DNA of 64,000 bases from IMGVR_UViG_3300041402_000314:140150-204149, one strand, 5' to 3'; shown: positions 21,259 through 54,081, counted from the first letter of the stretch. Translations and numbers: made by a program. Notes: generated from the letters alone by a model not told the origin.

Positions 21259-22239
21259 ATGAAAGAAAAAATAATTTGTCATATTTGCTATAAAGAATTT
21301 AATTCTATTCTTAGTTTATCGAGACACATCAAACCCGCTCACAGTATATCAAGTAAAGATTATTTTGATAAATTTATCAAAAAAGAGAAAAGTGGTTTAT
21401 GCTCAGTATGTTCAAATCCTACTCGTTTTGTTAATTTCGGTATAGGATACAAAAAATATTGTTCAAATAGCTGTCATAACAGAGATAAGAAAGCTCTGAC
21501 AGATATAAGAGATGCACTTATCTATGAAGAAAAAATAAAAACCGAAACGATAGTTTTTGACTGTGAGATTTGCGGATATAAAATTTTTAATAACTATCAT
21601 GGTATTGGTTCTCATCTAAAACATAAACATAACTTATCTATACAAGAATATTATGATAAATATTATTTAGAAAATATATTAGATAAGAAATGTAACATTT
21701 GTGACCGAGAAACATCATTTCGCTCTTTAGAAGTTGGGTATACTAAATATTGCTCTATTTCTTGTAGTAACAAGGAAGAGGTTAACATATTAGCAAGAAA
21801 GAAAGGTATAAATAAGAAAGAAGTAAAGGAGAGACAGTCTCGTAATTTATCACAGAGAATTTTAAATGGGACTTTTAATCCATTCGCTAAAAAATTTAAA
21901 ACTGGATATTTTTATTCTGAGAAAAATCAGAAAGATTTGTATTACCGTTCATCATATGAATTAAAAGCATATCAAATGTTGGAACAGATGTCTTTAGTTA
22001 ACATATATGAAACTGAACCATTTAGAATACCTTATAAGGATATGAAAGGTGTAACTAGAAATTATATACCTGATATTTTGATTATCTATGAAGATGGTAT
22101 GAGAGAATTGGTAGAAGTGAAACCAGAAAATTTATTAAAGGATGAAACCATTCAAATAAAAACAGAATCTGCCAAACAGTATTGTAAAGCCAATAACATG
22201 TCCTTTAATATATGGACTGAAAAATTCCTAGAACTATAA
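21259..22239 (+). CDS. TnsA-like PD-(D/E)xK endonuclease with two tandem Zn-binding repeats (free-standing endonuclease or gp4-like)
   Basis: RSSYE, EPxxIPY, YIPD, LVEVKP, WTE; duplicated CxxC..H...H / CxxC...GYxKYCSxSC; ATG 21259 has a GGAG RBS. Confidence 0.8.
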   Translation: MKEKIICHICYKEFNSILSLSRHIKPAHSISSKDYFDKFIKKEKSGLCSVCSNPTRFVNFGIGYKKYCSNSCHNRDKKALTDIRDALIYEEKIKTETIVFDCEICGYKIFNNYHGIGSHLKHKHNLSIQEYYDKYYLENILDKKCNICDRETSFRSLEVGYTKYCSISCSNKEEVNILARKKGINKKEVKERQSRNLSQRILNGTFNPFAKKFKTGYFYSEKNQKDLYYRSSYELKAYQMLEQMSLVNIYETEPFRIPYKDMKGVTRNYIPDILIIYEDGMRELVEVKPENLLKDETIQIKTESAKQYCKANNMSFNIWTEKFLEL

Positions 22240-42279: not shown

Positions 42280-42322
42280 GACTCCTTTGTGATATAAATA
42301 ATTAAAATATCACAAAGGAGTC
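42280..42322 (+). promoter_or_regulatory. RBS-sequestering hairpin containing a late promoter
   Basis: perfect 16-bp inverted repeat GACTCCTTTGTGATAT/ATATCACAAAGGAGTC; TATAAATA 42293-42300; AAGGAG in the 3' arm. Confidence 0.85.
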
Positions 42323-42324
42323 TT

Positions 42325-43080
42325 ATGTCTGATCAAAGAGTTTCCATTATTATCCCGAATAAAAATAGTTATGAAATGTTAAAGGATTGCATTGATTCTA
42401 TTTTCCTTACCACCTCTTATCCCAACTACGAGATAGTCATTGTAGAAAATGGGTCAACAGAGGAAGATATATTTGAGTATTATGAAATCTTGAAAAAGAA
42501 TCATAGTAATCTCAGAGTATTCACCTATAAAGAACCTTTCAATTTTTCCGCTATAAACAATTTTGCTGTCCGACAAACAAACAGTGAATTCCTGTTATTT
42601 CTCAATAATGATACCAAAATAATCAATGAAGATTGGCTAATCGCTATGGTTCGCATTCTTAAGAATAAAAAGAATGGCGTAGCTGGTGCTACTCTCCTTT
42701 ACGATGATGATACTGTCCAACATGCAGGAATAGCAACAGACCCTAAATGGATAGCATACCACATCAACCATAAAATTACAAGAGAAAACATTCCGACTAA
42801 ATCAATGACGGTTGATGCTGTTACTGGCGCATGTTTATTAACTACAACCGATATATTCAATAAGGTGGGTGGCTTCGATGAGAACCTTCCTATTGCATAT
42901 AATGATGTCGATTTCTGTCTAAAGGTAAGAGATAGAGGCTACAAGATTAAATGGACTCCGAATTCTCTACTATATCATTACGAATCTAAGACAAGAGGAT
43001 TGGATGACGGAACAGAGAAGAGAGCTAGACTTAAACGTGAATCTGAATACATGAGGTCAAAATGGAAGACAAAACTTTAG
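42325..43080 (+). CDS. GT2 glycosyltransferase
   Basis: VSIIIP, VENGS, FNFSAINN, FLNND, AVTGACL, GGFDE, DVDFC, HYESKTRG. Confidence 0.92.
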   Translation: MSDQRVSIIIPNKNSYEMLKDCIDSIFLTTSYPNYEIVIVENGSTEEDIFEYYEILKKNHSNLRVFTYKEPFNFSAINNFAVRQTNSEFLLFLNNDTKIINEDWLIAMVRILKNKKNGVAGATLLYDDDTVQHAGIATDPKWIAYHINHKITRENIPTKSMTVDAVTGACLLTTTDIFNKVGGFDENLPIAYNDVDFCLKVRDRGYKIKWTPNSLLYHYESKTRGLDDGTEKRARLKRESEYMRSKWKTKL

Positions 43081-43847
43081 TCAATTTAGTAATAGTCACA
43101 TTTAATCGTTGGGAATATACCGAACAGTGTATACCGAGTATAAGAGAAACCGCTTCTGATAATATTCCATACATAATAACCGTTGTCGATAATGGCTCGA
43201 CTGATGGGACTCCAGACAAATTAAAGGAAATGTATAATGCTGGTCTCATAGATCATCTTATATTACTCAAAGAGAATATCGGTATCTCTAAGGCTCAAAA
43301 TCTAGGGTGGAAATGTCATGAAGAAGTTCCTTTCTATGCTAAGATAGATAATGATATTATATTCAATAAAAATGGCTGGTTAAATGGCATTATAAATACT
43401 TTTGAGAAGACCACCAATATCGGTGCTTTAGGTTATCAATGCTCTGATGACGGTGCTGAATACCCTGCTGTTATAGATAACGGAGTCGAGTATAGAGTTA
43501 AGAATGGCAATATTGGCGGAGCCTGTTTCTTCGTACCGAAACATATCAATGAGGAACTAGGATATTGGTGTGAGGAATATGGCAAGTATGGTGAAGAGGA
43601 TGCCGACTATGGGATGCGTATTACCGTCTCAGGCCACTTAAATTGTTATATGATGGATAGGTCTACCATTACCCATTTACCAGACGAGAAAGGCGATTAT
43701 AGGTCTTTCAAGGATAATGAGAGAGAAGAGAACTTGAAGGGAAATTTCTGGAATCTGATCAAGGAATATAGAGCTGGAAAAAGACCTTTGAAAATAGAGA
43801 CAAATATTTTAGATGAAGCTGATATCGAAGGAGAATATATAAGATGA
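43062..43847 (+). CDS. GT2 glycosyltransferase
   Basis: IVTFNR, VVDNGSTDGT, N.G...A.N, IDND, G.EDAD. Confidence 0.9.
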   Translation: MEDKTLVNLVIVTFNRWEYTEQCIPSIRETASDNIPYIITVVDNGSTDGTPDKLKEMYNAGLIDHLILLKENIGISKAQNLGWKCHEEVPFYAKIDNDIIFNKNGWLNGIINTFEKTTNIGALGYQCSDDGAEYPAVIDNGVEYRVKNGNIGGACFFVPKHINEELGYWCEEYGKYGEEDADYGMRITVSGHLNCYMMDRSTITHLPDEKGDYRSFKDNEREENLKGNFWNLIKEYRAGKRPLKIETNILDEADIEGEYIR

Positions 43848-44281
43848 AAATACCTGAATTGATAGACGAATATTTTGAAATTCTTGATAGATTGATTGAA
43901 ATTAATAAATTAAGAAGAGAGGAAATCCATGTTAACATAAAAAATATGATAGGTTCCCAATATTACATTGATGAATACTGTACAATTAAATGTGATATTG
44001 GGAGACAAACTGGAAAGTCTGAATATGTTAGGAGAAGAGGTAATAAAAATACATTAGTAATTGTAACTAAGTCCGCATATAAGGCACATTATAAAGATTT
44101 TGAGGGAACGGTAATGTCACCAATAGAGATTATGAACGGTAAGATACGTGGAATTGAAAGATTCGAAACCATATTTATAGAGGAACCTTCTTTTACTCTT
44201 AAGAATGTTTCTAAAGATCAATTATATAATGAGTTGGTGGATAATACGAAAGAACAAACCTTTATTATATTAGGAATGTAA
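43844..44281 (+). CDS. small protein with terminase-ATPase-like Walker motifs
   Basis: GRQTGKS and RG...TIFIEE in only 145 aa. Confidence 0.65.
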   Translation: MKIPELIDEYFEILDRLIEINKLRREEIHVNIKNMIGSQYYIDEYCTIKCDIGRQTGKSEYVRRRGNKNTLVIVTKSAYKAHYKDFEGTVMSPIEIMNGKIRGIERFETIFIEEPSFTLKNVSKDQLYNELVDNTKEQTFIILGM

Positions 44282-44282
44282 G

Positions 44283-44660
44283 ATGAAGAAAGAATATGCT
44301 CATGAAATTGATATGACTCACCTAGTACCACCATATAAGGCAAAAGAAAGCGATCTTATTTTTAATAATAGACCTACTCAGGAAGATGTTATTAAAGCTG
44401 AAAGGGATGATAAACTTATTATTATATTATTAGAAGTTCCTGAATTGACTTGTGATGAGCTGATTGCGTTTACAAAGGGATATCTAAATTGTTTAGGAAT
44501 TGAAGAATCTAGCCTTAACATACAAACATATGTGGTATCTGAAATAATAGATTATGATGGTTGGAAAGAGAGTTTTCTTAAAAATTATTTACTGATTAAC
44601 GAAATGCATGAGCCTTGGTTTGCTCCTGCTGGATTTAATAGAGGTATGATAAAAAAATGA
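44283..44660 (+). CDS. small protein ending in a tail-sheath signature motif
   Basis: PWFAPAGFNRG at the C-terminus. Confidence 0.65.
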   Translation: MKKEYAHEIDMTHLVPPYKAKESDLIFNNRPTQEDVIKAERDDKLIIILLEVPELTCDELIAFTKGYLNCLGIEESSLNIQTYVVSEIIDYDGWKESFLKNYLLINEMHEPWFAPAGFNRGMIKK

Positions 44661-44696
44661 AAATTGGACTTGTAGATTAAGGCGACAAACTAACGA

Positions 44697-44704
44697 TATA
44701 AATA
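44697..44704 (+). promoter_or_regulatory. T4-type late promoter
   Basis: TATAAATA upstream of the methyltransferase/GT operon. Confidence 0.75.
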
Positions 44705-44736
44705 CTTAAAATAATAGCTTATAGGAGAAAGAAAAA

Positions 44737-45294
44737 ATGGAATACGAATTAGGTGAACCAGCTAAAATTATATTGAAGGAACTGACTGATAGAGGACATT
44801 TAGATAAAGATAATTTACCTAAAATATGGATAGAAACAGGTACGTATAAAGGTCATAGTACAAAAAGTTTCGCAGAAGTATTTGACCATGTTTATACTAT
44901 TGAAATCAAACCAGAATTAACCGAAGAGGCTAAAGAATATTGTAAAGACTTTGATAACATTACATATTTGAATGGTCCTTCTCCCACAGTATTGAATGAG
45001 CTATTACCTACCTTAAAAGAAACTTATGCTATATTCTTAGATGCTCATCATAGTGGTGGTGATACTGGTCTTGATGAGAAATACGGAGCGCATGGAACGC
45101 CTCTTGAAGAGGAACTAGCCATTATAGGGAAATACAGTAAAGACGGTCTTATCGTAATCGATGATTGTGTAGACCTTGGCTCTTATAATTACCCAACTCC
45201 TCAAAAATTAGAAACTGTTATGAAGGGTATTAATGGTAACTATAAGGTGGAGTTCATGGAAATACTTAGACGTATAGGCGTATGCTACACGTAA
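44737..45294 (+). CDS. class I SAM-dependent methyltransferase
   Basis: IETGTYKG, VYTIE, FLDAH.SGG.T, PL.EEL, VIDD. Confidence 0.85.
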   Translation: MEYELGEPAKIILKELTDRGHLDKDNLPKIWIETGTYKGHSTKSFAEVFDHVYTIEIKPELTEEAKEYCKDFDNITYLNGPSPTVLNELLPTLKETYAIFLDAHHSGGDTGLDEKYGAHGTPLEEELAIIGKYSKDGLIVIDDCVDLGSYNYPTPQKLETVMKGINGNYKVEFMEILRRIGVCYT

Positions 45295-45312
45295 GATAAA
45301 ATCTTAGGAGAA

Positions 45313-46047
45313 TTGAAAATGAAATTAGCTTTATTGTGTCCGACAAGAGAAAGAGTAGGGAGTGTTAGAAGATTAGTCGATTCTATTTTAGCGACAACTA
45401 CCGATACCAACAACATAATTCTTTATCTAGGAATAGATGATGACGACCCTACTAAAGGGGAAGTGGAAGAAATGGTTTCAGAATATTCTTTTGTTAAAGT
45501 AATCACTGTTCCTAGTGACGGCACAGGAGAATTCATAGGGTTGGGAAAAATATGGAATCATATGGTAACAGAAGTACCCGATGAAATATTTGCTATGATA
45601 GGCGATGATATGGTTTTCGAAACCAAAAATTGGGATGTCGAGATACTAGGGGAATTTGAAAGAAGTGCAGATAAGATAATTCTCGTCCATTGTAATGACG
45701 GTATGAGAGGTATCAATGAGCCTTTGGCTGTCAATTCGTTTATATCCAGAATATATTATGAAACATTTGGACAATATGTGAGAGAAGAATGGAAACATGA
45801 GTATCATGATACATGGTTACATGATGTTTTCACTAGGTTAGGAAGAAGAATCTATAGACATGATATAGTTTTATTCCATCACCATCCATGCAATCCAAAT
45901 TCAGAGGCAGTTGGTGATAAAACCACCGAAAGATTGGATTCTTCAAGAACTCATAATAATGATGCGAACCCACATAAATCGTTCGAAGACTTAATTCCAT
46001 TAAGAGTAGCAGAAGTGGCTAAATTACAGGAGATTATCAATGGTTAA
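45313..46047 (+). CDS. GT-A fold glycosyltransferase
   Basis: PTR.R, IDDDD, GDD..F....WD, D.W. Confidence 0.8.
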   Translation: MKMKLALLCPTRERVGSVRRLVDSILATTTDTNNIILYLGIDDDDPTKGEVEEMVSEYSFVKVITVPSDGTGEFIGLGKIWNHMVTEVPDEIFAMIGDDMVFETKNWDVEILGEFERSADKIILVHCNDGMRGINEPLAVNSFISRIYYETFGQYVREEWKHEYHDTWLHDVFTRLGRRIYRHDIVLFHHHPCNPNSEAVGDKTTERLDSSRTHNNDANPHKSFEDLIPLRVAEVAKLQEIING

Positions 46048-46606
46048 ATTATCCTTATTAATATGTACATTGGAAAATCGAAAAGACTTTCTAGCTAAAT
46101 TAATGGCTTGTATTGATAAGCAAAAGACAGATGAAGTGGAGGTGCTATTTTCTCTTGATAATGGGGATAAGACAACAGGGCAGAAAAGAAACGAATTGTT
46201 AGAGCAAGCTCAAGGCGAATATACGGCTTTCTTGGACGATGATGATATGATATCAGATGACTATGTTTCGTTAGTCTTGGATGCTATCAATAAAAGCAAT
46301 CCTGATGTAATAGGTATGCATCTCTTAATGACCGTAGATGGTGAGAACGAAGAACGTACATATCATGCCCTGAAGTATGATCATTGGTGGGATGAACCAG
46401 ACCCAGAAAGACCGGGTAGAACCAGATATTTTAGAAATCCAAATCATCTCAATCCAGTAAAAAAAGAATTAGCTTTAAAAACAAAATTCATAGATACTGA
46501 TTGGGGCGAAGACCTTGAATATAGTAAAGGATTGCTCCAGTATCTCAAAACCGAAGAATATATCGAATCTCCGATATACTACTATCTCTGTAGGAGCAAT
46601 AAATGA
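46040..46606 (+). CDS. GT2 glycosyltransferase
   Basis: LSLLICT, G.KRN.L...A.GEY..F.DDDD, GED. Confidence 0.88.
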   Translation: MVKLSLLICTLENRKDFLAKLMACIDKQKTDEVEVLFSLDNGDKTTGQKRNELLEQAQGEYTAFLDDDDMISDDYVSLVLDAINKSNPDVIGMHLLMTVDGENEERTYHALKYDHWWDEPDPERPGRTRYFRNPNHLNPVKKELALKTKFIDTDWGEDLEYSKGLLQYLKTEEYIESPIYYYLCRSNK

Positions 46607-47283
46607 ACATAAGAATTGACCAGTCCGCAGGTTTTGGCGATATCTTTTTCTGTCAAAAAATAGGAAGGAGATTGATCGAGCTTGGACATACGGTATATTG
46701 GCCTATTTTTCATGGATATAGTTATGTATCCCAATATATACCTGAATTCCGTTGGTGTGAACCACCAGCGAACGAAGGTTTTGAAAATTTAAACCTCGGA
46801 CAGGCAAGCATTTTAATCGGATGGGATGACCCTAGTGATATCGATGATAAGGTCATGGAATCCAAATACGATTACGCTAATACTCTTTATGATATTGGCG
46901 ACTATTCGGATTGGCCTGATTATCTCAAAATAAACAGATATCACGACAAAGAGAAATTATTATCTGATAAGGTTCTTAAAAATGTTCCCGATGAATTTTG
47001 TGTCATAAATAGACATTTCGCAACTGAATGTTTATTTCTTGAAGAAGAGATAAAATCAGATTTGCCTATAGTAGAGATAAACAAACTACCCGGATTTACC
47101 TTATTTGATTGGTGTGGAGTCTTGGAGAAGGCGACTGAGATTAGGATTCCCGATTCCAGCTTTCCATATCTCGTAGAAATGTTAGATACTACCGATGACC
47201 TTTACATGTATAATCGTACAGGGGAACCCTATATAAGAACTAAAAAGATTTGGAAGAAAAAATGGAGGTTTATGGATTCATGA
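46603..47283 (+). CDS. putative GT-B-type glycosyltransferase
   Basis: Q..GFGDI.F, LFDW..VLE.A.EI...DSS. Confidence 0.6.
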   Translation: MNIRIDQSAGFGDIFFCQKIGRRLIELGHTVYWPIFHGYSYVSQYIPEFRWCEPPANEGFENLNLGQASILIGWDDPSDIDDKVMESKYDYANTLYDIGDYSDWPDYLKINRYHDKEKLLSDKVLKNVPDEFCVINRHFATECLFLEEEIKSDLPIVEINKLPGFTLFDWCGVLEKATEIRIPDSSFPYLVEMLDTTDDLYMYNRTGEPYIRTKKIWKKKWRFMDS

Positions 47284-48224
47284 AATTTTTAATAACAGGC
47301 GTAGACGGATTTGTAGGTAAACATTTAGCTGATGTCCTTCTCGGAAAGGGTTGTGAAGTATATGGTCTCACCAGAAGAACGAAACACGATGAATCGAACA
47401 TAACGTATTTATTCGAAGATATAAACGATAAGGTGGGAATATATAAGCTATTCAAAGAACATTCTTTTGATGGTGTATTCCATCTAGCAGGATTAACCCA
47501 TCCACCGACATCATTTAAAGAACCAGTACAATATTTTGAGACCAATGCTTTAGGGTCTATAAATATATGTGATGCTATACAGAAGACAAATAAAGAATGT
47601 GTGTTGATGCAATGTTCTACTCCAGAAGTTTATGGTATATGTCCTAGTGATAAAGAGATAGATGAATCCTTTCCACTTAGACCTATGAACCCTTATGGAG
47701 TTTCTAAAGCAGGAGCAGATTTATATATTTTAGAAAGAGCTAGAAATAACGAGATAAAGGCATTCCTTACCAGAAGTGGTTCGCATACTGGTCCGGGTAG
47801 ACCTGCTAATTATTCAATATCTTCAGATGCTATTCAGATAGCTAAAATATTGAAAGGCGAGCAAGAGCCTAAAATAAGAGTGGGCAACTTATCATCTCAA
47901 AGAGCCGTATTGGACGTAAGAGATATAGCGGATGCTTATTACGAATTAATGGTAAGCTTTTTAGCTGGTGATATACCCAATGGAGAGATTTTCCATGTCA
48001 GCGGTAAGAATCTTCAAGAGATAGGATATTACCTAAATATCATGTTAGATGCTTATGGTCTGGAAGTTGAAAAGGTAAAAGATAGCAGACTATATAGAAA
48101 AATAGATATACCTATACAAATCTTAAATAGCGACAAGTTAACAAAATATATCGACTGGACTCCTAACATACCTATAGAGGATACCTTAAGAGATTTAGTT
48201 GAATACTGGATGGAGAGAATATAA
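47280..48224 (+). CDS. GDP-mannose 4,6-dehydratase / GDP-4-keto-6-deoxymannose reductase family SDR
   Basis: LITG.DGFVG, HLAG, ST.EVYG, PYGVSK, H.GP.R, VGNL...R...DVRD; start ATG 47280. Confidence 0.88.
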   Translation: MKFLITGVDGFVGKHLADVLLGKGCEVYGLTRRTKHDESNITYLFEDINDKVGIYKLFKEHSFDGVFHLAGLTHPPTSFKEPVQYFETNALGSINICDAIQKTNKECVLMQCSTPEVYGICPSDKEIDESFPLRPMNPYGVSKAGADLYILERARNNEIKAFLTRSGSHTGPGRPANYSISSDAIQIAKILKGEQEPKIRVGNLSSQRAVLDVRDIADAYYELMVSFLAGDIPNGEIFHVSGKNLQEIGYYLNIMLDAYGLEVEKVKDSRLYRKIDIPIQILNSDKLTKYIDWTPNIPIEDTLRDLVEYWMERI

Positions 48225-49273
48225 TGAGTGTTAAAGATGTAGATTCACATAAATTAGGTTATCATCCAGAAAGAGTTGTCGAATGGAAACAAAACGGTAT
48301 TTGTTTTCCTCTTCATATCGAAGTAGGTTTAACCAATAAATGTAATCATGCTTGTATACAATGTACATTGGATTGGATTAATCATAAAAGTGATATCATA
48401 GAGACTGAAGTATTTCTGAAGACGCTTGAAGATGCTGCTAAGATGGGTGTCAAGTCAATTTATTTTGCTGGAGAAGGTGAGCCAACATTACATAAGGACT
48501 TACCTTTATTCGTTAAAAAGGCTTATGATCTTGGTATGAAAATTTCATTGGCTACCAATGGCTCTAAATTGGATAGGGAAATGTCTGAGAAGATCATGCC
48601 TTATTTATCTTGGATAAGATTCAGCGTAGATGCTGCAACTAAAGAGACCTTCAGTAAGATACATAGAGTAGGCATCAACGAATTCGATAAGGTAGTTGAT
48701 AATATAAAGACTTGTATCGAAGTTAATGGTTCTGGGTGTCAAGTAGGTATCCAGACTTTACTTATGCCTGAGAATGTCCACGAAATAGAAGATTTGGCTA
48801 AGATGTCTAAAGAGTGGGGAGCGCATAATATTCAGGTTAAACCAGCTCATACACATCCAAAAAGCTCATATCAAGCTGGTATTTATCTTTATTCTCAAGA
48901 AGAATTACAGACACGTTTAGAAACGTTAAGTGATGAGAATTTCACTGCCATCGTAAGACTGAAGAGCATGGAGAGATTATTAGAGCCTAGAACGTATCGA
49001 GAATGCCACGCATTCCACTTTTATTGCCTAATTGATGCATATGGTCAAGTTACACCTTGTAATATCTTCTACAGCGACCCTGAGTTCATATTCGGTAATA
49101 TACATGAAGAATCTCTAACCGATATTTGGATGGGCGATAAGAAGAAAGAAGTTATAGAGAAAATAACCGAGACCAACCATTCAAGATGTGATGAATATAG
49201 ATGTAGACAAGACGTTATGAATAGGTATCTCGAAAGAGTAAAGAATCCAGAACTTAATGACGAGTTTATTTAA
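48224..49273 (+). CDS. radical SAM protein with SPASM/twitch domain
   Basis: CNHACIQC, GEGEPTLH, TNG, C-terminal C...G.V.PC...GNI....L..IW. Confidence 0.92.
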   Translation: MSVKDVDSHKLGYHPERVVEWKQNGICFPLHIEVGLTNKCNHACIQCTLDWINHKSDIIETEVFLKTLEDAAKMGVKSIYFAGEGEPTLHKDLPLFVKKAYDLGMKISLATNGSKLDREMSEKIMPYLSWIRFSVDAATKETFSKIHRVGINEFDKVVDNIKTCIEVNGSGCQVGIQTLLMPENVHEIEDLAKMSKEWGAHNIQVKPAHTHPKSSYQAGIYLYSQEELQTRLETLSDENFTAIVRLKSMERLLEPRTYRECHAFHFYCLIDAYGQVTPCNIFYSDPEFIFGNIHEESLTDIWMGDKKKEVIEKITETNHSRCDEYRCRQDVMNRYLERVKNPELNDEFI

Positions 49274-49892
49274 TATGAAATTACCTGATATCATAGAAGA
49301 ATATAGAGCTGAAGAGGGCAACAAACATTTCTATAAAATAGACGATGTTTGGGTTTGGCCTATGCAGAACAACCAGATATTTCCGCTTTTCGAAAAGTTA
49401 TTTAAGGATAATAAATTTGAAAGGATTGTAGAGATAGGTACTGCATATGGTGGACTTCCGATTCTATTAAGAGCTATGGGATTCGAAGGCGATATAATCA
49501 CTTATAATATTCATGATGAATTGAAAAATGATGTAGCAACATTGTTTAATAAATTCGTCATATATCGAATAATACAAGATGTGTTTGCTAATGAGAAAGA
49601 ATTAGGTGAAAGGATTTCAGCCAAAGGCGGAACCTTGATTATCTGTGATGGTGGCGATAAACCTAGAGAGGTTAATATATTTTCAAAATATTTGAAAACA
49701 GGTGATGTCATCATAACCCATGATTATTTCGATAGCGAAGAGAAATTTGAATCAGGTGAGTTAAGTGAATATTGGGGTGTATGTGAAATCACCTATAAAG
49801 ATATTGAGCAAGCTTGTGTTGATAACGGAATAGAACAAATAGAATCAACTTTATCAGAACGTGCAGCGATGTATGTAGGGAGGAAGAAATGA
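49257..49892 (+). CDS. SAM-dependent methyltransferase (CmcI-like)
   Basis: IVEIGTA.GG, CDGG.K..E, LK.GD.I..HD. Confidence 0.78.
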   Translation: MTSLFNMKLPDIIEEYRAEEGNKHFYKIDDVWVWPMQNNQIFPLFEKLFKDNKFERIVEIGTAYGGLPILLRAMGFEGDIITYNIHDELKNDVATLFNKFVIYRIIQDVFANEKELGERISAKGGTLIICDGGDKPREVNIFSKYLKTGDVIITHDYFDSEEKFESGELSEYWGVCEITYKDIEQACVDNGIEQIESTLSERAAMYVGRKK

Positions 49893-50317
49893 AAATAAAA
49901 GAAGCATTAAAGTTAGGAAATGGTAAAGCACAACTGTCTGAGTATGCAGAAGGAATATATGCAGAATTGGGTGTCAATGAGACTTTATTTTGTGGTGTCG
50001 TACCAATACCATTTAAAGATATTATCGGTGAAGATTGGCTACCCTTCTATGACGGAATTGTAGTGATTCCTAAAAATGGCGGAGAGGTCTGGAAACGCGA
50101 CTCTGGGGAAAAGCTTTTCATTTTAGAAGGAAAGGCGCAGAAAGAACCTTTCATAGCTAGTGAAGCCGTAGATTCATCTGGAAGAATTCATTGTTTAACT
50201 TCTATAAATACCTATGACGATGATGTTAGAATACTTGGTCGTGGAGGTATTCTTTTAGTTCACGGCTATGACGGTTGGACTAGAGAATACCCCATAATAG
50301 ATGAGAAGGAGCAATAA
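49889..50317 (+). CDS. paralog family A member inside the glycosylation island
   Basis: MKIKEALKLGNGKA...DIIGEDWLPF...PKNGGEVWK...VHG.DGWTREYP. Confidence 0.7.
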   Translation: MKIKEALKLGNGKAQLSEYAEGIYAELGVNETLFCGVVPIPFKDIIGEDWLPFYDGIVVIPKNGGEVWKRDSGEKLFILEGKAQKEPFIASEAVDSSGRIHCLTSINTYDDDVRILGRGGILLVHGYDGWTREYPIIDEKEQ

Positions 50318-51328
50318 ATGAAAAGAGCATTAGTATGTGGTGCTGGTGGATTCATCGGTAGCCATCTAGTAAAAAGACTTAAGAATGAAGGATATTGGGT
50401 TAGGGGTGTTGACCTCAAACAACCAGAATTCTCGGAGACTGAAGCAGATGATTTTTATGTCGGTGATCTTAGAAATCCTAATGTCTGTAGCACTGTTCTA
50501 CATTATAATACAACTCATGAGAAGGACTTCGATGAGGTCTATCAATTAGCTGCTGATATGGGCGGAGCTGGTTTCGTATTCTCTGGAGAAAATGATGCTG
50601 ATATCATGCATAACTCAGCACTGATCAATCTCAATATACTTAATCTGCACCATAAGTTTAAAAAGATTTTCTATAGTAGCTCGGCTTGTATGTATCCAGA
50701 ACATAATCAGCTCGACCCAGACAATCCTAATTGTACTGAGGATTCGGCATATCCAGCTAATCCAGATAGTGAATATGGATGGGAAAAACTATTCAGCGAA
50801 AGACTCTTCCTCGCATATGCTAGAAATAAAGGTGTAGATGTTAGAATAGCGAGATTCCATAATATCTTCGGTGAAGAGGGTACATGGGATGGTGGACGTG
50901 AGAAAGCTCCTGCTGCTCTATGTAGAAAGATCATAAAAACATATGGCGGAATCGAGATGTGGGGAGATGGTAAACAGACACGCTCATTCCTATATATCGA
51001 TGAGTGTGTTGAAGGAATAAGACGTTTAATGGAATCTGATTTCAAAGAACCTGTTAATATTGGTTCTGAGGAAATGGTATCTATTAAGGATTTTGCTATA
51101 CTGATAGCAACTATCGAGGATAAAGATATTGTGATTACTCATATAGACGGACCGATTGGTGTTGCTGGAAGGAATTCTGATAATACACTGATTCAGGAGA
51201 AGCTAGGTTGGAAGCCATCATTCCCATTGTTGTATGGAATTACGAAAACCTATTTCTGGATAAAAGAACAGGTACGTTTATCGGACATGGCGAAGGTAGA
51301 GATAGCTAGTGTGGATGAGAACGTATAA
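50318..51328 (+). CDS. GDP-mannose 3,5-epimerase-like NAD-dependent epimerase
   Basis: GAGGFIG, LAADMGG.GF, SSSACMYP, YGWEK, RFHNI.G, GGREKAPAA.CRK, WGDG.QTRSF. Confidence 0.9.
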   Translation: MKRALVCGAGGFIGSHLVKRLKNEGYWVRGVDLKQPEFSETEADDFYVGDLRNPNVCSTVLHYNTTHEKDFDEVYQLAADMGGAGFVFSGENDADIMHNSALINLNILNLHHKFKKIFYSSSACMYPEHNQLDPDNPNCTEDSAYPANPDSEYGWEKLFSERLFLAYARNKGVDVRIARFHNIFGEEGTWDGGREKAPAALCRKIIKTYGGIEMWGDGKQTRSFLYIDECVEGIRRLMESDFKEPVNIGSEEMVSIKDFAILIATIEDKDIVITHIDGPIGVAGRNSDNTLIQEKLGWKPSFPLLYGITKTYFWIKEQVRLSDMAKVEIASVDENV

Positions 51329-51389
51329 TATGATACCATCACAAAGGTTGTACTATTAAGATCGCTTAAAAGCGAAATATGAGCGTCAA

Positions 51390-51397
51390 TATAAATA
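51390..51397 (+). promoter_or_regulatory. T4-type late promoter
   Basis: TATAAATA. Confidence 0.65.
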
Positions 51398-51413
51398 TTT
51401 AAAAGGAGAAAAT

Positions 51414-51581
51414 ATGACAGAAAAAGAAAAAGAAATATCTGAGCTATTATTAGAAGATATTGAAAAATCTGATATGAAAGTGATAAGAGATAGTTCAACA
51501 GTTAGATATGGTCGAACGACTAGATCAATAGCTATTGAAAACTATGTATATTTTATGGAGGCCACTAAAAATACAGATTAA
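51414..51581 (+). CDS. small late protein (55 aa)
   Basis: AAGGAG RBS after the late promoter; MTEKEKEISELLLEDIEK... Confidence 0.6.
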   Translation: MTEKEKEISELLLEDIEKSDMKVIRDSSTVRYGRTTRSIAIENYVYFMEATKNTD

Positions 51582-51583
51582 TG

Positions 51584-51618
51584 AAAAAGGAGAGCTAAGA
51601 TAATTTAGCTCTCCTTTT
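51584..51618. terminator. bidirectional intrinsic terminator
   Basis: AAAAGGAGAGCTAA/TTAGCTCTCCTTTT at the convergence of late and early blocks. Confidence 0.85.
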
Positions 51619-51620
51619 GT

Positions 51621-51803
51621 TTATTCTTCTGGGAGAAAATGTATTGTCAAGTTCGTCAACTGCCCATCATTTTGTTTCTGCCAACTAATAGCGTCAACTG
51701 AGCATAAATTTATACCCATATGATTCGGTATTACTTCAAGTGGGAGTGGACATTTTTCTTCGCTTTCAATCAAGTCCTTTACTTTTTTGAAATAAGTTTC
51801 CAT
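51621..51803 (-). CDS. hypothetical protein
   Basis: 60 aa ORF, GGGAG RBS. Confidence 0.65.
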   Translation of the reverse strand: METYFKKVKDLIESEEKCPLPLEVIPNHMGINLCSVDAISWQKQNDGQLTNLTIHFLPEE

Positions 51804-51816
51804 AATATTACTCCCT

Positions 51817-52152
51817 TTATCCTTCTTCCTGTTCTTCTTCGTAATCCTCTTCTACTGGAGTTTCTTCGTTCTCGTCTGGGTCTTCTATAATCTCGGTAGA
51901 AGGCTCTTCCATAATCTCGTCATTCTGTTGCGCTGCTGTCGCTTTCTCTACTTCCAAGGTAATTCTCTCATCAATTTCTTCATTAGTCATAATACCTTTC
52001 TCGACTAGTAGATTTTTAACTGCATTGAAAGAGATTACGAGTGTATTGAAATGATTTGAGGATTCATGAGCAAACTTATTTAATGCCATATTCCCCATGA
52101 TTGTCTTTCTTTCTAATTCTCCGAACATCTGAAATATTTTCTGATCTGTCAT
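51817..52152 (-). CDS. hypothetical protein with acidic tail
   Basis: AGGAG RBS; LLVEKGI.T.EE motif. Confidence 0.7.
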   Translation of the reverse strand: MTDQKIFQMFGELERKTIMGNMALNKFAHESSNHFNTLVISFNAVKNLLVEKGIMTNEEIDERITLEVEKATAAQQNDEIMEEPSTEIIEDPDENEETPVEEDYEEEQEEG

Positions 52153-52188
52153 ATTTTTCTCCTTTTGTTTTATAAAATTTTATTTTGC

Positions 52189-52440
52189 CTACATCCACTT
52201 GTCCTTTAGTTTACCCACTATAACCGAACCGTTTGTTTTATAGAAATTTATAGTATCTAATAACGTAAAATATTCTTCACAACCACAACATTTTTCACAA
52301 TCAACTAAATCGTTTATATTATCACATTCTTTTTTAAGATCGGTTATAAATTTACCTATCGCTCGATTCAATTCCTTACGATTTTCGATTTGATAAATAT
52401 CACCAAATTCTAACTTTCTACCACATAGAATATTTTCCAT
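52189..52440 (-). CDS. hypothetical protein
   Basis: TAATG coupling. Confidence 0.6.
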   Translation of the reverse strand: MENILCGRKLEFGDIYQIENRKELNRAIGKFITDLKKECDNINDLVDCEKCCGCEEYFTLLDTINFYKTNGSVIVGKLKDKWM

Positions 52441-52925
52441 TAAAGTAATTCCTGACCTAAATCAGTATTCTCCTCTACGACAACCTGTCCTTTAAGCATA
52501 TCAACCGTATTATCAAATGCTTTCTTCAGGACTTCAGGTTTTATATCCAATGGGTAAACTTCACCAGTCCTTCCCATTCCAGCCATAACACAATCCACAA
52601 TCATTTCCATTACATCAACTAGGTTTACATCTGCTGGTACTCCATCATCTTGTAATAAGTGATGACGATTTACAATCCTGTGATTATCCCACCATATTGT
52701 CTGTTTGAATCCTGTCTTGAAGTCTTCATGGAATTGATCAATATCGGTTAGCTTATCGAAATCATGCTTCTCTGCTGCTTCATCAAGCATATCTTTGAAA
52801 AGTATCATAGCTTTTTTCACATCGTTAATATGCTGTACGCTACTCTCAAATAATTGCTCTTTCGATACCTTGGAAAAATCACAGGAACGAGTATCGGCTG
52901 TCTTACTTTTTTGAATCGTTATCAT
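52440..52925 (-). CDS. HD-like protein (DUF5662-like)
   Basis: H...V, HD.DK, H...NRHH, D..EM..D. Confidence 0.7.
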   Translation of the reverse strand: MITIQKSKTADTRSCDFSKVSKEQLFESSVQHINDVKKAMILFKDMLDEAAEKHDFDKLTDIDQFHEDFKTGFKQTIWWDNHRIVNRHHLLQDDGVPADVNLVDVMEMIVDCVMAGMGRTGEVYPLDIKPEVLKKAFDNTVDMLKGQVVVEENTDLGQELL

Positions 52926-52936
52926 ATCTCTTCTCC

Positions 52937-54004
52937 TTAAAATCCGAATATTTCGCGATATTTCTTAACGCCTGCTGTTTCAAGCCAATATTTATCTAGC
53001 CATTTCCTTTGCTTTTGAATTATCTCTTCTTTCTTTTGCTTATTCTGGAAGATATCAATAATAGTATCTCTATCAGTTTTCCAATCTCCACTAAAGAATA
53101 ATTGCGATTCTTTATAAGGTGTAAGTTTAGAACTTATAGATATAATATCAGCACTGGCATAGTCCAAATTTTTTATATTCGATTTGCATTGATTAAATGC
53201 ATTATTAAGTAATGGAGCTACACCAAAATCACAATTAAGTTCTTTTAATACCGTAGGGTATTGATACATGCTACCTATCCAGCCGGGCATTTCTATTTTG
53301 TCCTCGTATGGTTTTAACCAAGTTGGACATTCACGAATACCTAATATCACCCACTCGAATTCGTCTATGGTATTTTTTATTAGATCAAAAATAATACCAA
53401 AATCACCTTTATCATATTGATTAAAATGCGTGGGCGAACCAGCGTAAAGGATTCTAGGCTTTTTATTCTCTTTCTTTATGAAATCATACGGCCTATACAT
53501 ATACTTAGCTAAATAGTTAGGCACTATTTTAACCTTACAGGAACCGCCGAATGCCTCTATTTTCTTCTTTAATGGATATGTGGAGACAGTAAAGATATCA
53601 ACTAAATTAGTTACTTTCTTCAAATTCTCTACTGAATGAGGGTCATTGTAAGTCTTTGACGCAAAGTTATAATTAGGTACTTCTCCGATAAGATCATCCA
53701 GATCATATATTATTTTATAATCTACTTGAGGTGATTTCTCTTTAATTTCACGAACTAATTCAATAAATTGTAAATGATGATCGGTAGTCTGTCTTTGGAA
53801 ATGGATAACCTTTATTTTTGGAAAAAGTCTATCTGGTATATACATCCTACTAGATACTATACCTTCATATAATTTCTTTCTGGAATGGGCAAATTGTGAA
53901 TTTAACTCGTTGTTAGGAATAATCGTTCTAAGTTGTCCGCAACCTGCGAAATCGGATTGGAATTGATATGTTAAACATGGGTCTTCGACTTTCTCTTTAT
54001 TCAT
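52937..54004 (-). CDS. GT-B glycosyltransferase
   Basis: GCG..R...P, FQR, YDLDD, TVST..L, VPN, GS.TH, APL..N.FN.CKS.IK. Confidence 0.85.
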   Translation of the reverse strand: MNKEKVEDPCLTYQFQSDFAGCGQLRTIIPNNELNSQFAHSRKKLYEGIVSSRMYIPDRLFPKIKVIHFQRQTTDHHLQFIELVREIKEKSPQVDYKIIYDLDDLIGEVPNYNFASKTYNDPHSVENLKKVTNLVDIFTVSTYPLKKKIEAFGGSCKVKIVPNYLAKYMYRPYDFIKKENKKPRILYAGSPTHFNQYDKGDFGIIFDLIKNTIDEFEWVILGIRECPTWLKPYEDKIEMPGWIGSMYQYPTVLKELNCDFGVAPLLNNAFNQCKSNIKNLDYASADIISISSKLTPYKESQLFFSGDWKTDRDTIIDIFQNKQKKEEIIQKQRKWLDKYWLETAGVKKYREIFGF

Positions 54005-54028
54005 ATATTTCTCCTGAACTCTTTCAAT

Positions 54029-54036
54029 TACTTATA
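54029..54036 (-). promoter_or_regulatory. late promoter variant
   Basis: TATAAGTA between a terminator and the GT RBS. Confidence 0.5.
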
Positions 54037-54041
54037 CCAAT

Positions 54042-54081
54042 AAAAAAAAAGGCTCGATCAGCAAATAAGCCAATCGAGCCT
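54042..54081 (-). terminator. intrinsic terminator
   Basis: AGGCTCGAT/ATCGAGCCT hairpin followed by a U-run on the minus strand. Confidence 0.8.

What the first reader, a model, noticed from the sequence alone, without database searches (positions are those of the whole stretch)
42325..54036. Late-expressed glycan island: six GTs, two methyltransferases, radical SAM, two GDP-sugar enzymes
Seen: the cluster directly follows virion genes on the late strand, with TATAAATA at 42293 and 44697; a further GT on the minus strand has TATAAGTA. No flippase or polymerase is seen. Inference: late timing favours virion protein glycosylation with methylated or unusual sugars over DNA or host-LPS modification.
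Basis: partly seen in the sequence, partly recalled or inferred. Interest (0 to 1): 0.62.

Follow-up and report, generated by a model that had tools for sequence, protein, structure and literature searches.

The report
Late-operon glycan cassette of a phage
A T4-like phage carries, at the end of its late tail-gene operon, a sugar-building and sugar-transferring gene cassette that also sits inside the head/tail operons of unrelated phages and most likely coats the virus particle with unusual methylated sugars, although no experiment shows this yet.

Summary
Window 42325-51328 (+) encodes five glycosyltransferases: three Pfam GT2, one GT-A found by PHROG, and one compact GT9-like GT-B found by fold. 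It also encodes a COMT-type O-methyltransferase, a weaker second methyltransferase-like protein, a radical SAM enzyme with a twitch/partial-SPASM domain, a GDP-mannose 3,5-epimerase (E 6e-98, catalytic residues kept) and a GDP-heptose/mannose 4,6-dehydratase/Rmd-like SDR. A sixth GT (GT-B) lies at 52937-54004 (-).

Both TATAAATA sites match a 15-nt extended motif, TATAAATA-N-TTA-N-AA. The window has 6 such sites against 0.03 expected; the genome has 33. Elsewhere the motif precedes the portal, scaffold, major head, tail sheath and baseplate hub genes. The genome has a gp55 homologue.

No island protein has a membrane segment. The genome has no priming transferase, no flippase/polymerase-like protein and no hydroxymethylase.

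The core cassette recurs at 50-65% identity in unrelated siphovirus-like phages, between capsid and tail genes or between terminase and portal genes. Its 188-aa GT2 matches, among cultured phages, only actinobacteriophage GTs, including Che8 gp108, which is adjacent to gp110, a GT reported essential for capsid glycosylation.

Virion glycosylation is the best-supported reading (about 0.55) but is unproven. Related islands in cyanophages and one other T4-like phage lie outside structural modules.

The parts
42293..42307 (+). Late promoter-like site, TATAAATAATTAAAA, 17 nt before the ATG at 42325
   Evidence: Exact match to the extended motif TATAAATA-N-TTA-N-AA (6 in the window against 0.03 expected). 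The same motif precedes the tail sheath, portal and major head genes. It is conserved before the orthologous GT2 in L004.
42325..43080 (+). GT2 glycosyltransferase no. 1 (251 aa)
   Evidence: Pfam PF00535 at E 2.6e-17, above the cut-off. 59% identical in L004. No membrane segment.
43062..43847 (+). GT2 glycosyltransferase no. 2 (261 aa)
   Evidence: Pfam PF00535 at E 5.7e-14. 65% identical in L004.
43844..44660 (+). Two small ORFs of unknown function (145 and 125 aa). Probably an insertion and not part of the pathway
   Evidence: Only phrog_2586 (unknown function) for the first. No counterpart in syntenic L004, where GT2 no. 2 is followed directly by the O-methyltransferase.
44697..44711 (+). 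Second late promoter-like site, TATAAATACTTAAAA, 25 nt before the ATG at 44737
   Evidence: Exact extended-motif match. L004 has the 8-nt core at the equivalent place (8086, before the start at 8133).
44737..45294 (+). Cation-dependent class I O-methyltransferase (185 aa), likely a sugar O-methyltransferase
   Evidence: Pfam Methyltransf_24 at E 7e-5, just below the cut-off. The AlphaFold model on a 36-sequence alignment (pLDDT 91) matches TrmR/COMT/CCoAOMT folds at Foldseek E 2e-10. Its family accompanies the GT9-like family in 55 of 87 clustered loci.
45313..46047 (+). GT-A type glycosyltransferase (about 242 aa), first gene of the conserved core cassette
   Evidence: PHROG 14945 glycosyltransferase at E 1e-22. 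DDDD and GDD motifs. 30-31% identical orthologues sit at the same place in L001, L002, L005 and L006. Among cultured phages, homologues occur only in Streptomyces phages and pelagiphage HTVC008M.
46040..46606 (+). Short GT2 glycosyltransferase (188 aa), core cassette; homologue of the N-terminal domain of Che8 gp108
   Evidence: Pfam PF00535 at E 1.5e-9. 60% identical in L001, L002, L005 and L006. Among 50,697 cultured-phage records the only homologues are 63 actinobacteriophage records, including Che8 gp108 (34% identity, 95% coverage, E 4e-16) and LittleE gp15, which lies next to the major head gene.
46603..47283 (+). Compact GT-B glycosyltransferase of a GT9-like, virus-restricted family (226 aa)
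   Evidence: No Pfam or PDB sequence hit. The AlphaFold model (pLDDT 93.6) matches WaaC, WaaF, 3tov, TibC and NodZ. 188 relatives in IMG/VR against 2 in 185,579 cellular species genomes. Fused to the SDR in L002. Co-occurs with the epimerase in 64 of 82 viral loci.
47280..48224 (+). Extended SDR acting on a GDP-sugar: 4,6-dehydratase and/or 4-reductase (GDP-heptose dehydratase / Rmd-like). The ORF as listed starts at TTG 47250; the likely start is ATG 47280
   Evidence: PDB 7us5 (GDP-D-glycero-D-manno-heptose 4,6-dehydratase) at E 8e-51, and 2pk3 and 6x3b (Rmd) at E 8e-45 and 1e-31. The Thr..Glu and YxxxK motifs are present. A GGAGG Shine-Dalgarno sequence and an ATGA overlap with the upstream stop mark the start.
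48224..49273 (+). Radical SAM enzyme with a C-terminal twitch/partial-SPASM auxiliary-cluster domain (349 aa), likely a nucleotide-sugar tailoring enzyme
   Evidence: Pfam Radical_SAM at E 5e-21 and SPASM at E 1e-10. CNHACIQC plus Cx12Gx4C and CDEYRC motifs. The weak best PDB hits are the sugar-modifying BlsE and BtrN. Always preceded by the SDR. Cellular relatives lie in NDP-sugar clusters.
49257..49892 (+). Putative second methyltransferase-like Rossmann protein (211 aa); weak assignment
   Evidence: Pfam Methyltransf_23 at E 0.004, below the cut-off. A VEIGTAYGG motif. hhalign probability 75%, E 2.6e-5 to the 44737 family. 68% identical in L004.
49889..50317 (+). Small ORF of unknown function (142 aa), probably an insertion
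   Evidence: No family hit. Absent from L004, where the 204-aa protein is followed directly by the epimerase.
50318..51328 (+). GDP-mannose 3,5-epimerase (336 aa); product GDP-L-galactose / GDP-L-gulose
   Evidence: PDB 2c59 at E 6e-98. Equivalents of Cys145, Tyr174, Lys178 and Lys217 are conserved. 57-64% identical homologues occur in 37 cyanophage and marine virus records.
51390..51581 (+). Third extended late motif (51390-51404) followed by a 55-aa ORF (51414-51581)
   Evidence: Its function is unknown. It is the last gene before the terminator.
51585..51618 (.). 15-bp-stem hairpin with T tracts, at the point where the + and - strand blocks converge; likely a bidirectional terminator closing the late unit
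   Evidence: The strand and GC-skew switch here.
52937..54004 (-). GT-B (GT1/GT4-like) glycosyltransferase (355 aa) on the opposite strand
   Evidence: PHROG 7162 glycosyltransferase at E 9e-24. Atlas feature and structure neighbours are virus-dominated 'glycosyl transferases group 1' clusters, TM 0.8-0.9. 73% identical in L004.
54029..54081 (-). TATAAGTA (54036-54029) preceded by a 13-bp-stem terminator hairpin (54081-54050)
   Evidence: The site reads TATAAGTAATTGAAA, matching 11 of the 13 specified positions of the extended late motif. It is absent before the L004 orthologue.

Best explanation
The island is a late-expressed, cytoplasmic pathway that makes unusual GDP-activated sugars from the host's GDP-mannose and transfers them, with O-methylation, onto proteins of the assembling virion.

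Shown from sequence:
- The epimerase is a bona fide GDP-mannose 3,5-epimerase.
- The SDR belongs to the GDP-heptose/mannose 4,6-dehydratase/Rmd subgroup.
- A radical SAM enzyme with an auxiliary-cluster domain is always paired with that SDR.
- There are five soluble GTs on the + strand and one on the - strand, plus a COMT-type O-methyltransferase.
- Transcription signals are identical to those of the head and tail genes.

Inferred:
- GDP-mannose is converted to GDP-L-galactose (or GDP-L-gulose) by the epimerase.
- GDP-mannose is also converted to a 4-keto-6-deoxy or 6-deoxy sugar by the SDR, which the radical SAM enzyme then tailors further.
- The compact GT9-like GT-B enzyme, which co-occurs with the epimerase in 78% of viral loci, uses one of these GDP-L-sugars.
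- The GT-A enzymes, including the Che8 gp108-like one, start and extend an O-linked glycan on capsid, tail or fibre proteins in the cytoplasm.
- The O-methyltransferase caps it.

The likely benefit is a glycan coat on the particle, serving for shielding, stability or adsorption.
For: (1) Timing. TATAAATA is a real signal in this genome: 52 of 85 copies are intergenic although only 13% of the genome is non-coding (P = 6e-25), and there is an orientation bias of 33 to 14. The 33 well-placed copies share the extension N-TTA-N-AA. The 15-nt motif occurs 6 times in the window against 0.03 expected. It precedes the DNA end protector, portal, scaffold, major head, head closure, tail sheath and baseplate hub genes. 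Both island promoters are exact matches. A gp55 homologue is present. The first promoter is conserved in L004.

(2) Position. The island is co-oriented with the sheath, tube, baseplate and fibre-like genes and directly follows them. It ends at a strong terminator.

(3) Comparative context. The core set (GT-A, short GT2, GT9-like, SDR, rSAM, epimerase) is 50-65% identical in phages with unrelated morphogenesis genes, and there it lies inside the structural operon. It sits between the major head gene and the neck/tail genes in L002, in the GCA_044344285.1 contig and in the widespread P0040 phage. It sits between the large terminase and portal genes in L005 and L006.

(4) Link to a proven system. 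The short GT2 has homologues among cultured phages only in actinobacteriophages. These include Che8 gp108, which lies in the gp108-110 block; gp110 of that block is reported as essential for capsid glycosylation. They also include LittleE gp15, immediately after the major head gene.

(5) Exclusions. The island has no membrane segment and the genome has no polytopic membrane protein. The genome has no PF02397 priming transferase, no PF00303 hydroxymethylase/thymidylate synthase family member and no T4 alpha-glucosyltransferase homologue.

(6) The GT9-like family is about 1000 times more frequent per contig in viral than in cellular collections.
Against: - No direct evidence exists of a glycoprotein, and no acceptor was identified. 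A scan for Ser/Thr-rich tracts gave nothing decisive.
- More distant islands that share the epimerase, the GT9-like GT and the O-methyltransferase lie among nrd, hli and ferredoxin genes in cyanophage S-T4 and next to UvsY and a helicase in a T4-like contig. Linkage to structural genes is therefore not universal.
- T4-type late promoters also drive non-structural genes.
- Soluble GT2 enzymes commonly act on undecaprenyl-linked acceptors at the inner face of the membrane, and host flippases could finish such a pathway.
- Only one of the three Che8 GTs has a homologue here.
- The genome is estimated 89% complete, so absences are not absolute.
Confidence: 0.55

Rival explanations
1. The island remodels the host cell envelope (LPS, capsule or S-layer glycan). 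This is the usual reading of the 'LPS gene clusters' of marine cyanomyoviruses. Phage GTs would add L-galactose, 6-deoxy or methylated sugars to lipid-linked host intermediates. Host flippases and ligases would export them, changing receptors so that superinfecting phages or released progeny are not adsorbed.
For: Related islands in cyanophages are described in the literature as cell-wall/LPS modification genes (PMC12801897). In S-T4 the island lies among auxiliary metabolic genes and includes heptose-pathway genes. The GT2 and GT9 families are typical of LPS and polysaccharide assembly. Cellular relatives of the rSAM lie in polysaccharide-type clusters.
Against: The genome has no priming phosphoglycosyl transferase, flippase, polymerase or ligase, and no island protein has a membrane anchor. 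The promoters are those of the head and tail genes, so expression is inferred to start only shortly before lysis. The core cassette is embedded inside capsid-to-tail or terminase-to-portal operons of unrelated phages. The GT9-like family is almost absent from cellular genomes.
Confidence: 0.2
2. The island glycosylates phage DNA (hypermodified bases carrying sugars) to evade restriction, as in T4 glucosyl-hmC and the diverse DNA glycans described for other phages.
For: The phage is T4-like. Phage GTs that decorate DNA with varied glycans are known (Pyle et al. 2024, cited in PMC12619734). All enzymes are cytoplasmic.
Against: The 204-kb genome has no member of the thymidylate synthase/dCMP-dUMP hydroxymethylase family and no T4 alpha-glucosyltransferase homologue. 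DNA modification must act during replication, whereas the promoters are of the late structural class. The same cassette lies within morphogenesis operons of small siphovirus-like phages. GDP-L-sugars and O-methylation are not known in DNA glycans (own knowledge).
Confidence: 0.05
3. The pathway modifies some other cytoplasmic target. Candidates are a non-virion phage or host protein, or a small molecule or soluble glycoconjugate made late in infection. The link to structural genes would then reflect only shared late regulation.
For: No acceptor has been identified. The nearest NCBIfam hits of the first GT2 include small-molecule GTs such as MftF. The rSAM family is functionally uncharacterised.
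Against: It is hard to explain why independent phage lineages insert the cassette between capsid and tail genes and why its GT2 is related to a GT adjacent to the virion-glycosylation GT of Che8.
Confidence: 0.15

Closest known systems
Mycobacteriophage virion glycosylation (Che8 gp108-110; Corndog gp38; Myrna), Freeman et al. 2023 as cited in PMC12363180 and PMC11256854
   Same: Phage-encoded soluble GTs that decorate capsid and tail-tube proteins. The window's 188-aa GT2 is 34% identical over 95% of its length to the N-terminal domain of Che8 gp108. In LittleE the homologue follows the major head gene and precedes further GTs and the head-tail connector. The cassette occupies the same slot in L002 and in the P0040 phage.
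   Different: No homologues of Che8 gp109 or gp110 are present. The host is not an actinobacterium (35% GC, T4-like aquatic phage). The island adds its own GDP-sugar synthesis (epimerase, SDR), a radical SAM enzyme, a GT9-like GT-B and O-methyltransferases. I could not read the primary paper, so the specific role of gp108 is not verified here.
'LPS / cell-wall modification' gene islands of marine cyanomyoviruses (P-SSM2, S-SCSM1, S-SCSM2R, S-T4, S-SM2)
   Same: They share the GDP-mannose 3,5-epimerase homologue (57-64% identity in 37 records), the GT9-like family (27-30% identity in S-T4, S-SM2, Sf-CH5/8 and Mel-JY01, where it is annotated hypothetical) and the COMT-type O-methyltransferase family.
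   Different: The cyanophage islands carry GT10/GT11 fucosyltransferase-like GTs, FkbM methyltransferases, PfkB kinase and heptose-pathway genes, and lie among metabolic genes. The window's island has no GT10 or GT11. It has the SDR-rSAM pair and the Che8 gp108-like GT2, and it is part of the late tail operon. The rSAM has no close homologue in any cultured phage (at most 27% identity).
Virus-encoded capsid glycosylation in giant viruses (chlorovirus PBCV-1 Vp54 glycans with methylated sugars; Mimivirus fibrils); own knowledge
   Same: A virus-encoded, cytoplasmic, host-independent glycosylation machinery with nucleotide-sugar enzymes, GTs and sugar methyltransferases that decorates structural proteins.
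   Different: Those viruses infect eukaryotes and have unrelated enzymes. No homology was tested here, so this is a functional analogy only.
GDP-mannose 3,5-epimerase (plant GME, PDB 2c59) and GDP-heptose 4,6-dehydratase (7us5) / Rmd (2pk3, 6x3b)
   Same: The epimerase matches at E 6e-98 with all four catalytic residues. The SDR matches at E 8e-51 and 8e-45 with Thr/Glu/Tyr/Lys motifs.
   Different: The SDR cannot be assigned to dehydratase or reductase, or to hexose or heptose, from sequence alone. Both genes are phage-borne and paired with a radical SAM enzyme of unknown reaction.

Membership tests
T4-type late regulon (gp55-dependent TATAAATA promoters) | TATAAATA element placed shortly upstream of late (structural) genes and enriched there | tested here: met
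   52 of 85 copies are intergenic (P = 6e-25). The extended motif precedes the portal, scaffold, major head, sheath and baseplate hub genes, and both island promoters match it exactly.
T4-type late regulon (gp55-dependent TATAAATA promoters) | Phage-encoded late sigma factor gp55 (with gp33 and the gp45 clamp as co-activators) | tested here: inconclusive
   A gp55 homologue lies at G000:C1:53031-53393 (-), E 5e-12, 29% identity. T4 gp45 gave no hit by single-sequence search. gp33 was not tested.
T4-type late regulon (gp55-dependent TATAAATA promoters) | Transcripts appear late in infection | not testable with these tools
Phage virion glycosylation system (Che8 gp108-110 type) | Homologues of the GTs of the proven system | tested here: inconclusive
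   The 46040 GT2 matches the Che8 gp108 N-domain (34% identity, E 4e-16). No island protein matches gp109 or gp110.
Phage virion glycosylation system (Che8 gp108-110 type) | Glycans covalently attached to capsid or tail proteins | not testable with these tools
   This needs glycoproteomics of virions.
Phage virion glycosylation system (Che8 gp108-110 type) | GT genes placed in or beside the morphogenesis operon (as in LittleE) | tested here: met
   In the window and L004 the island follows the tail module under late promoters. In L002, GCA_044344285.1 and the P0040 phage the cassette lies between the capsid and tail genes. In L005 and L006 it lies between the terminase and portal genes.
Wzx/Wzy- or ABC-dependent O-antigen/capsule cluster | Priming phosphoglycosyl transferase, flippase or ABC transporter, polymerase, ligase | tested here: not met
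   PF02397 is absent. The 204-kb genome has no protein with more than 4 hydrophobic segments, and the island has none at all.
DNA base glycosylation (T4 hmC glucosylation type) | dCMP/dUMP hydroxymethylase plus a DNA glucosyltransferase | tested here: not met
   PF00303 is absent. There is no T4 a-gt homologue. b-gt was not tested. The genome is estimated 89% complete.
GDP-mannose 3,5-epimerase | Close similarity to solved GME, with Cys145, Tyr174, Lys178 and Lys217 equivalents | tested here: met
   E 6e-98 to 2c59. The SSAC, YGxEK and GGREKAPAA motifs are conserved.
Radical SAM / SPASM | CX3CX2C cluster motif and the full seven-Cys SPASM motif | tested here: inconclusive
   CNHACIQC is present, and Pfam SPASM scores E 1e-10. 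Only Cx12Gx4C plus one CX4C follows, not CX2CX5CX3C, which suggests a single auxiliary cluster (twitch-like).
GT9 (heptosyltransferase) family | Sequence membership in PF01075 and a full-size two-domain GT-B of about 320-350 aa | tested here: not met
   No Pfam hit. The protein is 226 aa. The resemblance is by fold only (TM about 0.5, Foldseek E 1e-5). It works like a GT-B GT but is a separate, virus-restricted family.
Cyanomyovirus 'LPS' island type | GT10/GT11 fucosyltransferase-like GTs with GME, the GT9-like GT, and FkbM/Methyltransf_23 methyltransferases | tested here: not met
   GME, the GT9-like GT and the COMT-type methyltransferase are shared. No GT10, GT11 or FkbM is present in the window.

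The most novel reading that the evidence does not exclude
The core set (Che8 gp108-like short GT2, GT-A, compact virus-only GT9-like GT-B, GDP-sugar SDR, twitch radical SAM enzyme, GDP-mannose 3,5-epimerase, with or without a COMT-type O-methyltransferase) is a mobile, phage-specific virion-glycan cassette. It moves between unrelated tailed-phage lineages of aquatic, non-actinobacterial hosts and lands in their morphogenesis operons. It coats capsids or tails with methylated L-galactose/6-deoxy sugars, including a radical-SAM-tailored GDP-sugar not yet described. This would make particle glycosylation a widespread trait of environmental phages and would re-interpret at least part of the 'LPS islands' of marine phages.
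Probability: 0.35. Interest if true: 0.8.

Novelty: new variant of a known kind. Interest (0 to 1): 0.62.

Why it matters
Glycosylated virions have been demonstrated only for a few actinobacteriophages. The large sugar-gene islands of marine phages have been labelled 'LPS modification' for twenty years without a test.

This locus gives a concrete, testable link between the two. One of its GTs is related to a GT in Che8's glycosyltransferase gene block, next to a GT reported essential for capsid glycosylation. Its promoters are those of the head and tail genes. The same cassette sits between capsid and tail genes in unrelated phages.

If virions of such phages carry glycans, that bears on phage adsorption, on stability and grazing in water, on immune recognition of therapeutic phages, and on how viral 'auxiliary metabolic genes' are interpreted.

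The locus also points to three enzyme families worth biochemical study: a compact virus-only GT-B, an SDR-radical SAM pair acting on GDP-sugars, and phage GDP-mannose 3,5-epimerases.

Tried and rejected
- The megablast of the island against cultured phages found only a 132-nt stretch of the epimerase in S-T4.
- PDB sequence searches for 46603 and 45313 found nothing. For the two methyltransferase candidates they found only noise.
- BLASTP between the two methyltransferase candidates was negative. Only profile comparison linked them weakly.
- A Ser/Thr-rich tract scan of all predicted proteins gave no convincing acceptor.
- The Atlas search for the upstream 310-aa protein gave only a weak tail-fibre/BppU-like C-terminal resemblance on a poor model.
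- T4 gp45 and alpha-glucosyltransferase found nothing in the genome. These are single-sequence searches with no positive control.
- Rfam and tRNA scans of the region were empty.
- The sigma-70 scan was at background (49 sites against 55 expected).
- TATAAGTA as a late promoter for the minus-strand GT is plausible by near-match to the extended motif but is not conserved in L004, so I do not rely on it.
- Freeman et al. 2023 is not held. Literature searches for a radical SAM acting on GDP-sugars in phages found nothing relevant.
- I considered calling the SDR a heptose enzyme and the GT9-like protein a heptosyltransferase. S-T4 has heptose genes nearby, but the window has none, and the stronger co-occurrence is with the epimerase. 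The donor is left open.
- Complex prediction was not used, because no acceptor candidate was strong enough.

Full report
**Setting.** The window is the last 64 kb of a single 204,149-bp viral contig (35% GC, CheckV completeness 89%). The phage is a distant T4-like myovirus. Its tail sheath is about 38-39% identical to those of pelagiphage HTVC008M, Campylobacter CP81-type phages and Vibrio phages. The + strand block from 19.5 to 42.3 kb encodes the tail sheath, tail tube, baseplate hub, hub/lysozyme, wedge and other tail proteins. The island follows directly on the same strand. The strand and the GC skew switch at about 51.6 kb.

**Gene content.** On the + strand:
- 42325 and 43062 are GT2 enzymes above the Pfam cut-off.
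- 44737 is a class I O-methyltransferase. Pfam Methyltransf_24 is just below the cut-off. A model built on 36 family members (pLDDT 91) matches the TrmR/COMT/caffeoyl-CoA O-methyltransferase folds at Foldseek E 2e-10. The invariant Asp/His/Asp-Asp positions are typical of cation-dependent O-methyltransferases.
- 45313 is a GT-A type GT (PHROG 14945, E 1e-22; acidic DxD-like motifs).
- 46040 is a short GT2.
- 46603 had no sequence-level annotation, but a confident model (pLDDT 93.6) is a compact GT-B fold. It is closest to GT9 heptosyltransferases, to the protein heptosyltransferase TibC and to the fucosyltransferase NodZ.
- 47250 is an extended SDR closest to GDP-D-glycero-D-manno-heptose 4,6-dehydratase (E 8e-51) and to the GDP-6-deoxy-4-hexulose reductases (Rmd). 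It has the Thr/Glu and YxxxK motifs. Its real start is probably ATG 47280, behind a GGAGG sequence and overlapping the upstream stop.
- 48224 is a radical SAM enzyme with CX3CX2C and a C-terminal partial SPASM (twitch-like) cysteine pattern. Its weak best structural relatives are the sugar-modifying BlsE and BtrN.
- 49257 is only weakly methyltransferase-like.
- 50318 is a GDP-mannose 3,5-epimerase (E 6e-98 to the Arabidopsis enzyme, all four catalytic residues conserved).

On the - strand, 52937-54004 is a GT-B GT1/GT4-like enzyme.

The second methyltransferase is the weakest item. Three small ORFs (43844, 44283, 49889) are absent from the nearest relative and look like insertions.

**Promoters.** TATAAATA occurs 85 times in the genome, and 52 copies are intergenic although only 13% of the genome is non-coding (P = 6e-25). 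Thirty-three copies lie within 60 nt upstream of a same-strand start, against 14 in the wrong orientation. Those 33 share a downstream extension, giving the consensus TATAAATA-N-TTA-N-AA. This 15-nt motif occurs 33 times in the genome and 6 times in the window against 0.03 expected.

Its targets include the DNA end protector, portal, scaffold, major head protein, a virion structural protein, head closure, tail sheath and baseplate hub genes. The sites at 42293 and 44697 are exact matches, 17 and 25 nt before their start codons. The genome encodes a homologue of the T4 late sigma factor gp55. In relative L004 (a 163.6-kb contig, 59-84% protein identity, same gene order) the extended motif again precedes the first GT2, and the 8-nt core precedes the O-methyltransferase. 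A 15-bp-stem hairpin at 51585-51618 closes the + strand unit.

I conclude that the + strand island is co-regulated with the head and tail genes. This is an inference from sequence, not from RNA data. The TATAAGTA site before the minus-strand GT resembles the motif (11 of its 13 specified positions) but is not conserved in L004. That gene's timing is left open.

**What the island lacks.** No island protein has a hydrophobic segment typical of membrane proteins, and no polytopic membrane protein exists anywhere in the genome. There is no priming phosphoglycosyl transferase and no sugar-1-phosphate nucleotidyltransferase, so the pathway must draw on host GDP-mannose. The genome has no member of the thymidylate synthase/hydroxymethylase family and no T4 alpha-glucosyltransferase homologue. 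All GT2 and SDR genes of the genome are in this island.

**Comparative evidence.** The genes from 45313 to 50318 form a conserved core: GT-A, short GT2, GT9-like GT, SDR, rSAM, (methyltransferase), epimerase. Besides L004, this core occurs at 50-65% identity in phages whose structural genes are unrelated to T4.
- In L002 it lies between the major head gene and the neck, major tail and tape-measure genes. There the GT9-like gene is fused to the SDR.
- In an NCBI contig, and in a very widespread ~67-kb phage (P0040), it lies between the capsid gene and the tail terminator. In the P0040 phage it sits with an APS kinase and a faint sulfotransferase.
- In L005 and L006 it lies between the large terminase and the portal, protease and capsid genes.

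The same cassette is thus embedded in the morphogenesis operon in at least three different genome architectures. The picture is not uniform. One T4-like contig has the SDR-rSAM pair in a large island beside UvsY and a helicase, and two other contexts are unclear.

**The GT9-like family.** This family has 188 relatives in IMG/VR but only 2 in one genome each of 185,579 cellular species, and one of those two is a phage contig binned into a MAG. That is about a thousand-fold difference per contig, with the caveat that both scans are pattern-seeded. In 82 viral loci it co-occurs with the epimerase in 64, with the COMT-type methyltransferase family in 30 by BLAST (55 of 87 loci by clustering), with the SDR in 22 and with the rSAM in 4. 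The more distant loci are of the cyanophage island type, with GT10, GT11, FkbM, PfkB kinase and DegT. Among cultured phages the family occurs only in cyanomyoviruses, where it is annotated hypothetical. In S-T4 the island sits among nrd, hli and ferredoxin genes, with heptose-pathway genes.

**Link to a proven system.** The short GT2 (46040) finds only 63 records among 50,697 cultured-phage records, all of them actinobacteriophages. They include Che8 gp108 (N-terminal domain, 34% identity, 95% coverage) and LittleE gp15. In LittleE this gene follows the major head gene and precedes a kinase, three more GTs and the head-tail connector. Che8, Corndog and Myrna are the phages in which glycans on capsid and tail-tube proteins were shown, and Che8 gp110 is reported as essential (PMC12363180, PMC11256854). 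I could not read the primary paper. No island protein matches gp109 or gp110. The GT-A 45313 has cultured homologues only in Streptomyces phages and pelagiphage HTVC008M.

**The radical SAM enzyme.** At least 204 relatives (42-82% identity) exist in metagenomes, and none is named beyond generic terms. No cultured phage has a close homologue. In phages the gene always follows the SDR. In cellular contigs, relatives lie in clusters with GT2, further radical SAM enzymes, split transketolase-like proteins and GDP-mannose-dehydratase-type SDRs. This points to tailoring of a nucleotide sugar, but the reaction is unknown.

**Mechanism proposed.** Host GDP-mannose is converted by the epimerase to GDP-L-galactose or GDP-L-gulose. 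The SDR converts it to a 4-keto-6-deoxy or 6-deoxy sugar, which the radical SAM enzyme modifies. The GTs build a short glycan on a cytoplasmic acceptor, and the O-methyltransferase(s) methylate it.

The enzyme families, their solubility, the promoter class and the cross-lineage placement are shown. The substrates, the order of steps and the acceptor are inferred. Because of timing, placement, the Che8 link and the missing export and DNA-modification functions, I rate virion proteins as the most likely acceptor (0.55). Host envelope glycans come next (0.2), then another cytoplasmic target (0.15), then DNA (0.05).

**Novelty.** Phage GT islands and virion glycosylation are both known, so this is a new variant of a known kind. 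Four things are new here:
- the extended late-promoter evidence;
- a conserved cassette shared by unrelated phages inside their structural operons;
- a virus-restricted compact GT-B family tied to GDP-mannose 3,5-epimerase;
- an SDR-radical SAM pair in phage glycan synthesis.

Noticed in passing
whole genome G000; window 19467, 22235, 23197, 42293, 44697, 51390: The phage's late promoters have an extended consensus, TATAAATA-N-TTA-N-AA. There are 33 sites genome-wide and 6 in the window against 0.03 expected. This is longer than the classical T4 8-mer.
   Followed up: yes
window 43844-44660 and 49889-50317: Three small ORFs (145, 125 and 142 aa) sit inside the island but are absent from the syntenic relative L004. 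They look like recent insertions into a late operon. The first hits only phrog_2586 (unknown function).
   Followed up: partly
L002:6761-8416: In this siphovirus-like contig the GT9-like glycosyltransferase and the GDP-sugar SDR are fused into one 551-aa ORF. This argues that the two act on the same sugar nucleotide.
   Followed up: partly
window 51390-51618: A 55-aa ORF (51414-51581) with its own extended late motif lies between the epimerase gene and a 15-bp-stem bidirectional terminator hairpin (51585-51618).
   Followed up: partly
window 21202-22239: A 345-aa ORF has a head-closure-like C-terminal part and endonuclease/homing-endonuclease-like hits further upstream. It may be a fusion or an endonuclease insertion next to the tail sheath gene.
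   Followed up: no
G000:C1:112187-113266 (L105:6188-7267): A homing/HNH endonuclease-like gene (359 aa) lies directly after the major head protein gene and has its own late motif.
   Followed up: no
contig of P0040 (ENA ERZ1426691): In a very widespread ~67-kb phage the same cassette is followed by an APS kinase and a faint sulfotransferase hit, which suggests a sulfated glycan.
   Followed up: no
L006:13975-15264; L103:5564-6811; L102: Some versions of the cassette add a B12-binding radical SAM enzyme, a class that includes C-methyltransferases. This hints at C-methylated sugars.
   Followed up: no
L100, L101: Cellular relatives of the radical SAM enzyme sit in a conserved set: GT2, rSAM, rSAM/SPASM, split transketolase-like E1_dh + Transket_pyr, rSAM/SPASM, SDRs. 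This is an uncharacterised sugar pathway, possibly for branched or chain-extended sugars.
   Followed up: no
window 52440-52925 (-) and L103:20695-21059: A DUF5662-like protein flanks the glycan island both in the window and in an unrelated large island (L103). Its function is unknown.
   Followed up: no
Wolbachia phage WO records MN180251.1 and MW788655.1: A gene annotated as a group 1 glycosyltransferase / MoaA-NifB-PqqE family protein shares 25-30% identity with the island's radical SAM enzyme. This suggests GT-rSAM coupling in another phage group.
   Followed up: no
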